From Obrimoposthia wandeli (Eukaryota): a stretch of 64,000 nt of DNA. Shown here piece by piece: positions 3,995 to 32,165 of the stretch; positions within the stretch are counted from its first letter, which is position 1; each line of letters opens with the position of its first letter. The stretch lies in NCBI GenBank assembly GCA_977020255.1, contig CDROCS010006605.1:1-64000 (forward strand), in the 5' to 3' direction. The notes beneath the pieces are model-generated. The model was not told the origin of the DNA. It saw only the letters and a program-made list of their open reading frames with translations, and ran no database searches. Made by a program: the position numbers and the translations under genes.

Positions 3995-5797
3995 TTATAA
4001 GGTCGCTTTAACTTTATTCAAGTGATTCACAAACTGTTCTTTATGCATTTCCCCTAGAATTCGTAATGTATCTACCTCGCCATTCTTTGTAAAAAACAAC
4101 ATGCTGGGTGGCCCGAATAAGTTGAAATCTGTCATCAATTGAACTTGCTCTGCCGTTTGCTCGGTAACGTCGATTTGCAGCCATAATAGTTCTGGCCAGT
4201 GAGCTTGTACGTCTGCTTCGTGAAAGACGGCTTTTTCCATCACCTTGCAGGCGATACACCAGTCGGCGTAATAATCGAGCATCACGGCGCCATTTGGATT
4301 GGCGGCGAGGTGATTTTTAATCGCGGCGTCTAGCTGAGTTTTATTTTCAATATTTTTAAACGGGCTAGCATTGTTATGATTTGTTGGGTTGTTAGTACCG
4401 CTGGCAGCATAGCTAGAGGCTAGGGGTTTTAGTGGATCGTCGTTACCTTGCAAGGCACCCATTAAGGCGAGTACACCATAAACCAGTATTACAAAACCAA
4501 TGCCTTTTACGGTGCGTTTAACGCCCGTGTGTGCAGGTTCGATCGGTTCAATAGCACCGAGGTAGATCGCATAAACGATCGCCAGTACGCCCCACATTGC
4601 GAGAATAAGAGTTGCGTCTAGGAAGCGTGATAATAACCAAATTGCTACACCGATTAATAAAATACCGAAGAAAGCTTTGATCTGATCCATCCAGCCGCCC
4701 GCTTTAGGCATAATAGAGGCGCCTGAAGTGCCGAGGATAATGAGGGGGGTTCCCATACCTAAGCCAAGGGCTAATAATGCGCTGCCGCCTAGCCAAGCAT
4801 CCCCTGTTGTACTCAAATAAACCAAAGCTCCCGCAAGCGGTGCTGATACGCAAGGTGAAACCACGAGAGCTGAAAGAACACCCATCAAAAAGACGCTGAT
4901 TAAGTTGCCGCCTTTTTGCTTTTGATTCATGTTGTTTAAACGATTACGCAAGCCGCTGGGTAGTTGCAGTTCGTATAGGCCAAACATTGAAAGTGAAAGT
5001 ACTAAAAATAAAATAGCAAAAATTGTGAGGATCCAAGGCGTTTGCATCCACGCTTGAATGTTGGCTCCTGCACCTAATAAACCAACGGTAATACCGGCCA
5101 CTGCATAAGTAATCGCCATGCCCATCACGTAGGTGGTGGATAAGACGAAACCTTTGGCGGGGGTATGCTTGTGCTGGCCGATAACGATGCTGGTTAAAAT
5201 CGGCACCATGGGTAATACGCACGGAGTAAAAGTGAGGCCTAAGCCTAGAATGAAGAATAAACCCACTACGCTGAACCAAGATTTGCCTTCGATCCAGCTG
5301 TCATTGTCAGTAGAAGGTTTTGCTGTGCTTTTATTTTCTGCAGAGGCTTTAACCAATGTCCAGTCGATATCGAGTTCGATTTTCTGCGGTGGATAGCAAA
5401 GCCCTGCGTCGGCGCAGCCTTGAAAGCGTAATTGCAACGGCTGTGTGGGATCTAATTTTGTTAGGTCAAATAGCGCTTCGGTTTGGCCATAAAAAACAGT
5501 TACTTCACCAAAGGCTTCATCGTGCTTAAGTATGCCTTTTTGGCTAAAGCGGTTGGCGAGGTGTTTGGTCTTGGCTTGTTTAAGTAGGATTTTTTTACGG
5601 TAAAGGTAATACTCATCAGCGCTATCCCACATAACGCTTAACTCGTTGCCTTTCTGGTCAATTTGATAAGGAAAGGCTTCGCTGACGGGTAAGAACTTAG
5701 GTTCGCCTTCGGTGAGGCTATCGAGAATGCCTGCCTGAGCTGAGCTGATGCTCAGCAGCAGAAAAATAAAGCAAACAGAAATGCGCGATCAAACCAT
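3995..5797 (-). CDS. dsbD: Thiol:disulfide interchange protein DsbD; the true start is probably 5797, with an in-frame TGA at codon 3
   Basis: GCADAGLCYPP, LTFTPCVLPM, SPCVSAP and WCIAC motifs. The frame continues upstream of the track start (5632) through a signal peptide to ATG 5797 with an AGGAG RBS. TGA at 5789-5791. Confidence 0.85.
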
Positions 5798-9217: not shown

Positions 9218-9275
9218 TCGCTTACAAGAGCGATTCATGAACCGCGCCTATAAAAAATAAGTGAGCATGAGAGCA

Positions 9276-10418
9276 ATGAAACCAGTTGTTGATTTAAATA
9301 CCGCCAGAGACCGCCTTGTTAGTGGTCAACGTTGGGTTATTAAAATTGGTAGCGCTCTGCTTACGAATGACGGCAAAGGCCTTAATCGCCCAGGCATCCA
9401 GGCTTGGGTTGATCAAATAGCCGATTTGATGTCGCAAGGCATTGAAGTCGTTTTGGTTTCTTCTGGCTCTGTTGCCGAGGGAATGACGCGTTTAGGTTGG
9501 ACTTCACGCCCTAGTGAAGTTCATCAGTTACAAGCCGCTGCGGCGGTAGGTCAAATGGGTTTAGTACAAGCTTACGAAACCGCTTTCCAGCAGCATAATA
9601 AACATACTGCGCAAATCTTATTAACTCACGCTGATTTATCCAATCGCCAACGCTATCTTAATGCGCGCTCGACTTTGCGCACGTTAATTGAAATGGGTGT
9701 TGTGCCGATCGTGAATGAAAACGATACCGTCGTCACCGACGAAATTCGTTTTGGTGATAACGATACGTTAGGTGCTTTGGTTGCTAATTTAGTGGAAGCC
9801 GATACGCTGGTTATTCTGACCGATCAAGATGGTTTATTCACTAAAGATCCACGCCATAATGATGATGCTGAATTAATTACCGAAGGCCGAGCTTCTGATG
9901 CATCGTTTGCTGCTATGGCAGGTGATGGTGGTGCGTTAGGTCGTGGTGGTATGATTACTAAGGTAAAGGCAGCGGGTGTTGCTGCGCGTTCTGGTGCGGA
10001 TACTGTTATTGTCGGCGGTCGCATTGAGAATGTATTGATACGTTTACGTGCGAAAGAAAAAATTGGTACGCTTTTGGTGGCTGATACTGAGCCAGAAGTT
10101 GCGCGCAAGCAGTGGATTGCTGGACATTTACAGCATTCTGGTGAGCTTATTCTTGATGACGGTGCGGTGAAAGCATTGAAGAAGGGCGGTAATAGTTTAT
10201 TGCCCGTGGGCGTTAAAGCGGTGAAAGGTATTTTCCGCCGCGGTGAAGTGGTTGCTTGTTTAGATGGTAAGAGCCGAATTATTGCTAAAGGGTTGATTAA
10301 CTTCGACCATAGCGAAGCGCAAAAGTTGTGCGGCAAGACCAGCGCTCAGCAGCAAGAGCTGTTAGGGTATGTTGGCGAAGCTGAGTTAATACATATTGAT
10401 AATTTAGTGGTGCTTTAG
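9276..10418 (+). CDS. proB: Glutamate 5-kinase (track start 9261; ATG 9276 more likely)
   Basis: [15 protein letters not shown] and NENDTV...FGDND motifs plus a PUA domain; follows obgE. Confidence 0.96.
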
Positions 10419-10447
10419 GGTTAATGAGCAATTGTGGGTTTTAAAAC

Positions 10448-10953
10448 CGCCGTTGTGTTACATATTGGCATGCGCTGCATTAGGTAATTCATTTCAGGGG
10501 ACGCCGTGAATACGTCACTTCGTTCTCCCTGTAGGCTCGTATCTGGCATCCATGCCAGATGACGCCGCCTGAAATGAATCACCTAATACATCACCATAGA
10601 AATTTTCTCAGATTTTAAAATGAATAATTATTTAAAATTTGACGGCTACAGGTGATGTACAAGCTTACTTCAATTCAGTCTTGAGAATGGATTTTTTTAA
10701 ATAGCTACGCATTCAAAATTTGGTCGTAGTGAGCGGTGAGCGCTAGAAGTTAATTTTTAAGGCCATCCGATTCCAGGGAGCGTAGCGCCGTGAATACTTG
10801 GAGCGGCTGGGAATCGTTGAGCTTACAGGGACAAAATGGCAGGACAGCCATTTTGCACAGCCGCAGGCTGCCCGAAGGGCGAAGTACAGGATGTACTGAG
10901 TGAGTGCGAACAGCGTGCCGCCTAAAATTCAACTTCTAGTGCGAGCAAAAGCG
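10448..10953. repeat. Composite palindromic element, copy 1 (long hairpin A 10479-10587, AT-rich spacer, long hairpin B 10740-10942)
   Basis: Two long inverted repeats enclose short hairpins. A 73-nt core at 10831-10903 nearly matches 32025-32098. The flanks align with the reverse complement of 31685-32165. Confidence 0.8.
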
Positions 10954-10964
10954 CACGGTGTAAA

Positions 10965-11065
10965 AAATAGCATATAACCGATCCGTGAGAAGTTTAAAGA
11001 ATCTAACGTCTTGGTCTAGTAAATAGCATATAACCGATCCGTGAGAAACTTAAAGAATCAAACGT
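10965..11065. repeat. 45-bp tandem direct repeat (two copies, 56-bp period)
   Basis: AAATAGCATATAACCGATCCGTGAGAA.. at 10965-11009 and 11021-11065, 42/45 identical. Confidence 0.9.
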
Positions 11066-11109
11066 ATCGGCGTAATTAATAATAATTTATATTTTCAAAC
11101 TTATTTTGA

Positions 11110-11966
<857 letters not shown>

Positions 11967-31684: not shown

Positions 31685-32165
31685 CGCTTTCGCTTGCTAT
31701 CGATATTGGGTATGTCGTTAGGCGGCACGCCGTGAACCCATCCATGGGGGCTCGGAGAACACATCCATGTGTTCTAACGGCCTTAAACGACACACCCAAT
31801 ACCGATACGCGAAAGCTGACAGCAATAAAATTTGAGATGACGTATCTCGTTTCAATATGTGAAAGCTGACATGCATGGGATTTAGAATGTCGAGTTGAAC
31901 AAGAAACTTAAACACAGTGATAAGCCGTCAGATTTAGATTATTGAAGGCTTTGAATAATAGAAAGTATTAGAGGCGATGTATGAGGTGGGTCGTTTGAAG
32001 CCCTTCTACAGCAGGGAGCTGTAGACAAAATGGCAGGATAGCCATTTTGCACAACCGCAGGTTGCCCGAAGGGGGAAGTACATGGATGTACTGAGTGATT
32101 GCCTTACGGCGTGGCGAAGAACGAGCTACCTCATGCAGAGTAAGCCCATATTTAGAATTACGGCG
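31685..32165. repeat. Composite palindromic element, copy 2 (long hairpin C 31686-31816, spacer, long hairpin D 31981-32134), inverted relative to copy 1
   Basis: 22-bp and 15-bp inverted-repeat arms. The core 32025-32098 matches 10831-10903. Flanks are homologous to 10448-10953 in reverse. Confidence 0.8.

What the first reader, a model, noticed from the sequence alone, without database searches (positions are those of the whole stretch)
10740..10942. Repeat hairpins look like CsrA/RsmA-binding RNAs, with strand-specific G.U pairs and a compensatory change
Seen: hairpin B has six GGA motifs on the plus strand, including loops in CAAAATGGC-AGGACA-GCCATTTTG and AGTAC-AGGAT-GTACT. D has GTACATGGATGTAC and CTACAGC-AGGGA-GCTGTAG. 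A and C carry ATGGAT loops on the minus strand. In all four long stems nearly all mismatches become G.U pairs on the GGA-bearing strand. CAGCC-GCA-GGCTG versus CAACC-GCA-GGTTG is a compensatory G-C to A-T change. Known: CsrA/RsmA prefers GGA in hairpin loops (SELEX consensus RUACARGGAUGU), and GTACAGGATGT/GTACATGGATGT are one change from it. Inference: selection acts on single-strand structure, and these may be repeat-encoded CsrA sponges transcribed divergently from the spacer or by read-through. GNA triloops could alternatively indicate ssDNA hairpins bound by a transposase.
Basis: partly seen in the sequence, partly recalled or inferred. Interest (0 to 1): 0.7.

Follow-up and report, generated by a model that had tools for sequence, protein, structure and literature searches.

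The report
Mobile RtT-like hairpin module with CsrA-type loops
A repeat between two housekeeping genes of a marine Oleispira-like bacterium carries a 74-base, four-hairpin insert related to the E. coli tRNA-trailer RNA RtT; it is widespread in Gammaproteobacteria and shows two loops that look like docking sites for the regulator CsrA, but binding is untested and the idea is already published for a related repeat family.

Summary
The hairpins, the GGA loops and the compensatory change are real. Two sub-claims are weaker. Six GGA in 203 nt is not above chance (P=0.11). The G.U strand bias holds for elements A, C and D but not for B.

B (10738-10944) is composite. It is a hairpin host repeat carrying a nested 74-nt module (10830-10903). 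The orthologous host element in three relatives lacks the module.

The module is a distinct family. It matched 66 of 151 sampled genomes of the class. 16-17 of its 22 base pairs show compensatory changes. Its loops are near-invariant: AGGA in hairpin 1 and CA(N)GGA(N)G in hairpin 4.

It is homologous to the core of RtT RNA (Rfam RF00391, the E. coli tyrT trailer), with model hits in both directions. In many genomes it sits in T-loop-like context just after tRNA genes, always co-oriented with them. In two genomes the order is csrA, tRNA-Ser, module.

So selection on single-strand structure is supported, and RNA is the more likely form. CsrA binding remains plausible but untested. No promoter is predicted in the spacer, and dispersed copies show no sense bias.

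The CsrA-sponge idea is already in print for the related TwoAYGGAY family. This scan noted similar GGA-hairpin modules nested in MITEs on other DNA of this assembly (s1-244686, s1-224247).

The parts
10472..10594 (-). Element A: host-type hairpin repeat with a long outer stem. Its CATGGATG loop is on the minus strand. It forms a divergent doublet with B.
   Evidence: Inverted repeat I1. Weak TwoAYGGAY match of 21.1 bits against gathering 43. Minus strand folds at -62.7 against -49.6 kcal/mol for the plus strand.
10595..10737 (.). AT-rich spacer between the divergent doublet A/B. Short blocks (ATCACCAnAGA, CAGATT, GACGGCT) recur in the spacers of other doublets (L002, L005).
   Evidence: Sequence comparison. 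No promoter-like or terminator-like site.
10738..10944 (+). Element B: host hairpin repeat (outer arms 10740-10759 / 10923-10942) that carries the nested module.
   Evidence: Inverted repeat I3, 85% complementary. Fold z-score -3.5. Orthologous copies without the module exist in three relatives.
10830..10903 (+). Nested 74-nt four-hairpin module (RtT-core-like), the source of the two loop GGA motifs.
   Evidence: Model R1 scores 94.4 bits. Covariation. Reciprocal RtT homology.
10832..10855 (+). Hairpin 1: 9-bp stem, loop AGGACA.
   Evidence: Loop is AGGA(N)(N) in most copies. 7-8 of 9 pairs show compensatory changes in wider sets.
10858..10870 (+). Hairpin 2: CAGCC-GCA-GGCTG (GNA triloop).
   Evidence: Compensatory against copy D. 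4-5 of 5 pairs covary. Shared with E. coli rttR (GCCGCAGGC).
10871..10879 (+). Hairpin 3: CCC-GAA-GGG, nearly invariant.
   Evidence: Shared with E. coli rttR and the Rfam RtT consensus.
10883..10897 (+). Hairpin 4: AGTAC-AGGAT-GTACT, a CsrA/Rsm-consensus-like loop.
   Evidence: Loop is CA(N)GGA(N)G in 25/25 class-wide copies while 4 of 5 stem pairs covary. Consensus cited.
31700..31808 (-). Element C: host-type repeat with two CATGGATG hairpins on the minus strand. It forms a divergent doublet with D.
   Evidence: -57.2 against -50.4 kcal/mol; G.U 5 against 0.
31958..32142 (+). Element D: A-type host repeat in the opposite orientation. It carries a second copy of the module at 32024-32098.
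   Evidence: Direct repeat D1, 93%. R1 scores 98.3 bits. Fold -81.2 against -63.4 kcal/mol.

Best explanation
B is a non-autonomous composite repeat. A hairpin-type host element, in the general style of TwoAYGGAY/REPIN divergent doublets, has recently acquired a 74-nt four-hairpin module at a hot spot (ACAGGGA | GTATTCAC). The acquisition was probably by conversion from another module-bearing copy.

The module is a mobile derivative of the core of RtT-type tRNA-trailer RNAs. In its commonest setting it sits inside a T-loop-like sequence (GGTTCGA|...|ATCC) of a tRNA 3'-end mimic. That unit is transcribed with the tRNA operon and followed by its own terminator.

Its four helices and two GGA loops are kept by selection on one strand. 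The most likely working form is RNA. Hairpins 1 and 4, whose GGAs lie 47 nt apart in B, would offer a two-site docking platform for one CsrA/RsmA dimer. That makes it a low-valency decoy, with higher valency in tandem arrays.

At this locus the plus (GGA) strand is the sense strand of both proB and kdsA. It is probably carried passively on a proB-to-kdsA read-through transcript. It is not a dedicated sponge gene.

Shown: composite anatomy, recent acquisition, covariation, loop conservation, RtT homology, tRNA linkage.
Inferred: RNA as the active form, CsrA as the partner, read-through transcription.
For: - Nesting: the orthologous element in strain C6451 and in two Oleispira MAGs lacks the module. 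A metatranscriptome contig also shows the empty form.
- Family: R1 finds 5-6 copies per Oleispira genome and 36 in a Marinimicrobium genome. It hits 66/151 evenly drawn genomes of the class.
- Structure: 97.6-98.7% of cells paired, and 16-17 of 22 pairs with compensatory changes.
- Loops: hairpin 4 is CA(N)GGA(N)G in 25/25 copies; hairpin 1 is AGGA in 19/24. They match the published CANGGANG / RUACARGGAUGU consensus.
- RtT link: Rfam RtT aligns end to end with an Alteromonas unit at 30.4 bits, E 5e-4, and with others at 27-40 bits. R1 hits exactly the three E. coli rttR repeat units at E about 6e-4. The shared blocks are visible by eye.
- RNA orientation: every tRNA-linked copy examined is co-oriented with its tRNA and is followed by a terminator or a tRNA 3'-end copy. 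Oleispira copies L042 and L050 lie 12-21 nt after a stop codon and just before an intrinsic terminator on the GGA strand.
- csrA is present in the Oleispira genomes. The order csrA, tRNA-Ser(GCU), module on one strand occurs in two genomes.
- A relative has proB and kdsA only 31 nt apart, which suggests co-transcription.
Against: - There is no direct evidence of transcription or of CsrA binding.
- No promoter or terminator is predicted in 10380-11140.
- Dispersed copies show no sense bias: 15 sense against 10 antisense in co-directional gaps. Several host-nested Oleispira copies are antisense to both neighbours.
- E. coli RtT and some RtT-like units lack GGA loops, so GGA is not essential to the scaffold.
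- Hairpins 2 and 3 have GNA triloops, which are especially stable in DNA (my own knowledge).
- The G.U excess is modest and biased by the alignment method.
- B itself shows almost no strand asymmetry.
Confidence: 0.55

Rival explanations
1. Selfish DNA only. The hairpins act as single-stranded DNA on one strand during mobilisation or copying, through a transposase, a recombinase or template switching. The conserved loops would be recognition determinants of that machinery, and any RNA would be incidental.
For: - Presence/absence polymorphism at orthologous sites.
- Tandem head-to-tail cores with a 71-nt period.
- Insertion into hairpin loops (tRNA T-loop-like sites, the host-repeat loop) and at gene 3' ends.
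- Copy number varies from 1 to more than 33 per genome.
- No sense bias for dispersed copies.
- GNA triloops in hairpins 2 and 3.
- G.T wobble can also stabilise DNA hairpins, so strand asymmetry does not separate RNA from ssDNA.
Against: - No partner enzyme was found. Y1/RAYT genes are absent from the two genomes searched that hold 36 and 3 copies. Where present they are not flanked by these motifs.
- The homologue RtT is annotated as an RNA gene (rttR, ncRNA 'small RNA RttR') in E. coli K-12.
- Strict co-orientation with tRNAs and terminators.
- The loops match a known RNA-binding consensus.
Confidence: 0.2
2. One reading: A/B and C/D are dedicated CsrA-sponge genes, transcribed divergently from promoters in the spacer.
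For: - In both doublets the GGA strands diverge from the spacer.
- Divergent doublets are the enriched architecture of TwoAYGGAY repeats, for which a multivalent Csr/Rsm sponge role has been proposed.
- Spacer blocks recur between doublets.
Against: - No sigma-70-like promoter or terminator in or beside the spacer.
- No Csr/Rsm Rfam hit.
- A relative lacks the whole 700-bp repeat block.
- The module is absent from the same element in three relatives, so there is no conserved gene here.
- Only 2-3 loop GGAs per element.
Confidence: 0.12
3. A structured RNA module whose partner is not CsrA. Candidates are a tRNA-processing or T-loop-recognising factor, a 3'-end stabiliser, a Shine-Dalgarno mimic that contacts 30S subunits, or the still unknown RtT function linked to the stringent response.
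For: - RtT homology and T-loop/acceptor mimicry of the tRNA-linked units.
- RtT-type units without GGA loops exist.
- The AGGA/AGGAG loops are also Shine-Dalgarno-like.
Against: The exact CA(N)GGA(N)G loop closed by an invariant C-G pair is the specific Rsm/CsrA signature. The window copy has lost all tRNA-like ends.
Confidence: 0.13

Closest known systems
RtT RNA (Rfam RF00391; E. coli rttR in the tyrT operon)
   Same: The core is shared: hairpin 2 (GCCGCAGGC), hairpin 3 (CCCGAAGGG), the CGA(A/G)G linker, the hairpin 4 stem and the GAGUAA/GAGUGA end. Model hits run in both directions. Relatives of the window module sit, like RtT, after tRNA genes within a copy of the tRNA 3' end, often in tandem.
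   Different: The window copy has no tRNA-like ends and is nested in another repeat. It gives no RtT hit at any threshold used, and relatives score 27-40 bits against gathering 45. Hairpins 1 and 4 carry GGA loops that E. coli RtT lacks.
TwoAYGGAY RNA (Rfam RF01731, clan CL00106 with CsrB/Rsm RNAs)
   Same: A repeat-like element on a long basal stem with AYGGAY hairpin loops. Divergent doublets are a few hundred bp apart. A CsrA/Rsm-sponge role and mobile-element-like spread are already proposed.
   Different: Only A gives a weak hit (21 bits against 43). B, C and D give none, and the Oleispira genomes give none. R1 does not hit true TwoAYGGAY elements, although it lies within 250 nt of them at 2 of 12 loci.
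CsrB/CsrC/RsmX/Y/Z sponge sRNAs
   Same: GGA motifs are presented in hairpin loops that fit the CsrA/RsmE consensus. Tandem arrays reach 6 or more loop GGAs.
   Different: There is no dedicated promoter or terminator here and no model match. Each module has only two conserved sites. The element is multi-copy and mobile.
Stable-RNA operon trailers acting as decoys (E. coli rrA/rrB/rrF sRNAs after rrn terminators; the 3'ETS-leuZ sponge)
   Same: A small RNA made by read-through or processing of a tRNA/rRNA operon that binds a global regulator. The rrn-trailer sRNAs bind Hfq and CsrA in vitro, according to the abstract of PMC8144298.
   Different: There is no sequence relation. 3'ETS-leuZ (my own knowledge) sponges sRNAs, not CsrA.
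REP/REPIN-RAYT systems and MITEs (ERIC, Correia)
   Same: Short, non-coding, hairpin-forming intergenic repeats with doublets, nested insertions and strain polymorphism.
   Different: No RAYT association was found. No clear terminal inverted repeat plus target duplication for the module. At this locus it replaced 18 nt rather than inserting cleanly.

Membership tests
CsrB/Rsm-type CsrA-sequestering sRNA (Rfam clan CL00106) | Several A(N)GGA motifs exposed in hairpin loops | tested here: met
   There are two conserved loop sites per module. However, the total GGA count in B is not above chance.
CsrB/Rsm-type CsrA-sequestering sRNA (Rfam clan CL00106) | Independent gene with its own promoter and intrinsic terminator | tested here: not met
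   No promoter-like or terminator-like site in 10380-11140.
CsrB/Rsm-type CsrA-sequestering sRNA (Rfam clan CL00106) | Covariance-model match at the gathering score | tested here: not met
   No hit in the window. Elsewhere only weak RsmV/RsmY/RsmZ matches of 17-24 bits.
CsrB/Rsm-type CsrA-sequestering sRNA (Rfam clan CL00106) | Binds and titrates CsrA | not testable with these tools
   Needs EMSA, CLIP or genetics. A csrA gene is present in related genomes.
TwoAYGGAY RNA (RF01731) | Model score of at least 43 bits | tested here: not met
   A scores 21.1 bits. B, C and D give no hit, and Oleispira genomes G001/G002 give none.
TwoAYGGAY RNA (RF01731) | Two AYGGAY hairpins on a basal stem; divergent doublets | tested here: inconclusive
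   C has two CATGGATG hairpins, A has one, and the B host has none of its own. The divergent doublets A/B and C/D match the published pattern.
RtT RNA (RF00391) | Model score of at least 45 bits | tested here: not met
   The window copy gives no hit. tRNA-linked relatives score 27-40 bits. A GNA-loop unit in Gilvimarinus scores 78 bits.
RtT RNA (RF00391) | Homologous core (hairpins 2-4 and linkers) | tested here: met
   R1 hits the three rttR repeat units and nothing else comparable in the 2.2-kb E. coli locus.
RtT RNA (RF00391) | Lies after a tRNA gene inside a copy of the tRNA 3' end | tested here: not met
   B and D are nested in host repeats between protein genes. The feature is met for relatives.
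REP/REPIN with RAYT | Cognate Y1 (RAYT) transposase gene flanked by the repeats | tested here: not met
   Y1_Tnp genes in G001-G003 carry none of the repeat motifs in their flanks. No Y1_Tnp gene in G004 (36 modules) or G005.
MITE | Terminal inverted repeats plus target-site duplication, with filled and empty sites | tested here: inconclusive
   Filled and empty sites exist. At this locus the module replaces 18 nt, and no consistent duplication is seen.

The most novel reading that the evidence does not exclude
RtT-type tRNA-trailer RNAs carrying two CsrA-consensus loops form a previously unrecognised, class-wide family of CsrA/RsmA decoys in Gammaproteobacteria. They would be co-transcribed with tRNA operons, often the tRNA-Ser operon directly behind csrA. 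That would couple stable-RNA synthesis (growth rate, stringent control) to the Csr network. Their 74-nt core has become a mobile micro-module that seeds CsrA sites into other repeats and into 3' UTRs, as in this window.
Probability: 0.25. Interest if true: 0.8.

Novelty: new variant of a known kind. Interest (0 to 1): 0.55.

Why it matters
- RtT has had no established function since it was described. A GGA-loop variant present in roughly four in ten sampled gammaproteobacterial genomes gives a concrete, testable partner: CsrA.
- It suggests a possible link between tRNA-operon transcription and the Csr system.
- It shows that a structured RNA core can move as a micro-module into tRNA T-loop-like sites, into other repeats and into gene ends. 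That bears on how regulator-binding sites spread through genomes.
- For this locus the practical message is more modest. The element is a recent, probably passenger, insertion between proB and kdsA.

Tried and rejected
- Rfam at gathering threshold on the window: nothing.
- blastn of an Alteromonas unit against E. coli genomes: no match. The homology shows only with covariance models.
- RNA evidence: the only RNA runs are metatranscriptome contigs from 90-95% relatives. They are strandless and fragmentary, so they show polymorphism but not expression.
- Promoter and terminator scans of the spacer, and of stand-alone copy L029: no promoter.
- RAYT/IS200 partner: rejected.
- Integron attC reading: considered because of GTTAGGC/GCCTAAC-like ends of the host element. 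Dropped, because there are no cassettes or integrase context and the elements lie between core genes.
- tmRNA or tRNA-gene reading of the tRNA-linked units: rejected. ARAGORN and Rfam call only the neighbouring genuine tRNAs and tmRNA.
- Orientation test against flanking ORFs: no significant sense bias. ORF calling was crude.
- Literature searches for rttR alone were swamped by unrelated acronyms. No paper links rttR functionally to CsrA.

Full report
**Setting**

The window is a bacterial contig inside a 1.35-Gb mixed assembly. proB (9261-10418, +) and kdsA (11128-11955, +) are 85-90% identical in DNA to two Oleispira MAGs. This agrees with an earlier scan note that called the window Oleispira. 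The finding, B (10740-10942), lies in the 709-bp gap between these two genes.

**Observation check**

All quoted hairpins are present at the stated places. B has six GGA on the plus strand and two on the minus strand. Six is not unusual for its composition: shuffles give a mean of 3.7, and P(>=6) = 0.11. Only the GGAs at 10842 and 10889 sit in hairpin loops that prove to be conserved.

The GGA-bearing strand folds better than its complement in A, C and D, by 7 to 18 kcal/mol. In B the gap is only 3.4 kcal/mol, and the G.U counts are equal. The claim about all four stems is therefore only partly right.

The CAGCC/GGCTG to CAACC/GGTTG change is real.

**Anatomy: B is composite**

- A second strain in the same assembly (contig C6451, locus L002) has the same proB-kdsA gap. 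Its B arms are 98-100% identical, but the central 74 nt are missing.
- The orthologous elements of both Oleispira MAGs also lack the insert. All three read ...CTTACAGGGA|GAGCGAAGCGGCGTATTC|ACAGCGTGCC...
- The window reads ...CTTACAGGGA|[74-nt module]GTGCGA|ACAGCGTGCC.... The module is therefore a recent acquisition. It is a replacement of 18 nt rather than a clean insertion with target duplication.
- A metatranscriptome contig from a relative shows the empty form. Another shows proB and kdsA only 31 nt apart, with no repeats at all.
- In other Oleispira copies the module sits at the same host position, between CTACAGG(GA) and GTATTCACGCCG, in eight cases. In three cases it stands alone within about 20 nt of a stop codon and just before an intrinsic terminator on the GGA strand.
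- A(-)/B(+) and C(-)/D(+) are divergent doublets of two host types in swapped order, with partly conserved spacers.

**The module is a widespread structured family**

An exact 27-mer of hairpin 1 occurs in Oleispira, Alteromonas, Gilvimarinus, Marinimicrobium and Shewanella records. I built covariance model R1 from 19 copies. It finds:

- 5 copies in the assembly;
- 5-6 per Oleispira MAG;
- 36 in a Marinimicrobium genome;
- 3 each in an Alteromonas and a Gilvimarinus genome;
- matches in 66 of 151 genomes drawn evenly from the class, at E <= 1e-4.

| Set | Distinct copies | Cells paired (shuffles) | Pairs with changes on both sides |
|---|---|---|---|
| A2 | 49 | 97.6% (79.5%) | 17 of 22 |
| A3, independent class-wide set | 25 | 98.7% (75.3%) | 16 of 22 |

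Slid-partner controls fall to 25-46% paired. These alignments are fitted to the model, so they lean towards the structure. The size of the effect and the hand-checkable stems leave little doubt.

The loops are conserved while the stems vary. Hairpin 4 is CA(N)GGA(N)G in 25/25 class-wide copies, closed by an invariant C-G pair. Hairpin 1 is AGGA(N)(N) in 19/24. This fits the Rsm/CsrA consensus (A/U)CANGGANG(U/A) and the SELEX consensus RUACARGGAUGU, as quoted in PMC6849547.

G.U pairs on the GGA strand outnumber A.C, which would be G.U on the other strand, by 20 to 7 (p about 0.02). The model's scoring favours G.U, so this is weak support.

**Relation to RtT**

In many genomes the module lies about 80-90 nt after a tRNA gene. 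The tRNAs seen were Ser (most often), Ala, Glu, Lys and Val-Asp, plus tmRNA. The module is always on the same strand as the tRNA.

There it is flanked by GGGTTC|GA...core...GA(A/G)T(C/G)A|ATCCC. That is, it lies inside a T-loop-like sequence. A copy of the tRNA's T-stem and acceptor 3' strand, up to CCA, follows, and then a terminator. Upstream is an arm complementary to that 3' end, so the unit ends in a tRNA-like minihelix.

This is the architecture of E. coli RtT. The supporting hits are:

- The Rfam RtT model aligns end to end with an Alteromonas unit at 30.4 bits, E 5e-4 in a local search.
- It aligns with others at 27-40 bits, below the gathering score of 45.
- A Gilvimarinus unit after tRNA-Lys scores 78 bits.
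- Conversely, R1 hits exactly the three 178-bp rttR repeat units of E. coli K-12 (E about 6e-4) and, more weakly, the tyrT-tyrV spacer.
- The shared blocks GCCGCAGGC, CCCGAAGGGCGAAG and CUGAGUAAUCC can be read directly.

E. coli RtT and some other units have GNA loops where the marine subtype has GGA loops. The GGA loops are therefore a feature of a large subfamily, not of the scaffold. No other Rfam family describes the module.

R1 does not hit genuine TwoAYGGAY elements, but lies within 250 nt of them at 2 of 12 loci.

**RNA or DNA?**

For RNA:
- The homologue rttR is annotated as an RNA gene.
- tRNA-linked and 3'-UTR copies are always placed so that the GGA strand is the transcript, and they precede terminators.
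- The loops match an RNA-binding consensus.
- There is a G.U excess.

For DNA or selfish spread:
- Filled and empty sites exist.
- There are tandem 71-nt cores.
- The module inserts into hairpin loops and at gene ends.
- Copy number varies widely.
- Dispersed copies show no sense bias: 15 sense against 10 antisense in co-directional gaps (crude ORF calls).
- GNA triloops are present.

A RAYT/IS200-type partner is not supported. I judge RNA-level selection on the family more likely than ssDNA, roughly 3 to 1. Spread by an unknown DNA-level process is compatible with both.

**CsrA**

- csrA is present in both Oleispira MAGs and in Marinimicrobium.
- In two genomes (handles G133 and G004) the order csrA, tRNA-Ser(GCU), module lies on one strand. 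This reflects the conserved csrA-tRNA-Ser neighbourhood and is only circumstantial.
- The two loop GGAs in B are 47 nt apart. From my own knowledge, that is within the range reported for bridging by one CsrA dimer.
- No promoter or terminator is predicted in the spacer or around B. The divergent-transcription idea therefore has no support here.
- B's GGA strand is the sense strand of proB and kdsA, so read-through is plausible. A's GGA strand is antisense.
- The public RNA data are strandless contigs from relatives and show nothing about expression.

**What is already known**

Gardner and Eldai (PMC4333381) proposed that TwoAYGGAY RNAs bind CsrA. Li et al. (bioRxiv 10.64898/2026.09.22.753630) showed that these elements are repeat-like, enriched as divergent doublets (68%, median 249 bp apart) and vary in copy number. 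They suggested multivalent Csr/Rsm sponges with mobile-element-like spread.

A scores 21 bits against 43, and B, C and D give no hit. This scan also noted GGA-hairpin micro-modules nested in MITEs on other contigs of the same assembly.

I did not find the following in the literature searched:
- the RtT homology of the GGA module;
- its class-wide distribution;
- its T-loop-like setting;
- its nesting in other repeats.

**Verdict**

The features are real. The element is a composite mobile repeat carrying a new GGA-loop variant of the RtT core. Selection on single-strand structure is well supported. CsrA binding is a reasonable but untested mechanism for the family. At this particular locus the element is most likely a recent passenger, not a dedicated sponge gene.

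Noticed in passing
window 10957-11068: Two tandem 56-nt direct repeats (86% identical) lie directly downstream of B and upstream of kdsA. The sister strain (L002) and the Oleispira MAGs appear to have one copy or a diverged one.
   Followed up: partly
L108 (G004:C26:80500-82400) and L106 (G133:C64:13800-16400): The order csrA, tRNA-Ser(GCU), one or two GGA modules, all on one strand. In L106 a tRNA-Arg(ACG) follows. A candidate CsrA-binding RNA therefore sits directly behind csrA in two genomes.
   Followed up: partly
L022 about 5100-5290 (Gilvimarinus chinensis): A second, partial tRNA-Ala(GGC) copy has an intact acceptor, D arm and anticodon arm, but the module is inserted in its T-loop. It lies about 600 nt upstream of the intact tRNA-Ala gene, with a TwoAYGGAY element (47.8 bits) between them.
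   Followed up: partly
L013 5270-5610 (Marinimicrobium sp.): Three head-to-tail module cores (71-nt period) lie after tRNA-Ala, without intervening tRNA-like ends. That gives six GGA loops in about 215 nt.
   Followed up: partly
L063 about 2160-2230; also L020 and L094: The terminator after the tRNA is the centre of a long palindrome. The tRNA 3' end (CCCTCCCTCTCCGCCA) is repeated as an exact inverted copy on the far side of the terminator hairpin, forming the 5' arm of the RtT-like unit.
   Followed up: no
window 10514-10526; L002 and L005: A 12-13-nt micro-insert (GAGCGAAGCGGC, or its complement) occupies the same host-repeat site that takes the 74-nt module. This suggests an insertion or conversion hot spot.
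   Followed up: partly
L085, L086 (class-wide sample): Some module copies in GC-rich genomes seem to abut or overlap the 3' ends of open reading frames. The module's terminal ...TGA may serve as the stop codon.
   Followed up: no
window 10417-11122, seen through run X6: A related strain in a marine metatranscriptome has proB and kdsA separated by only 31 nt. The whole repeat block is lineage-specific.
   Followed up: partly
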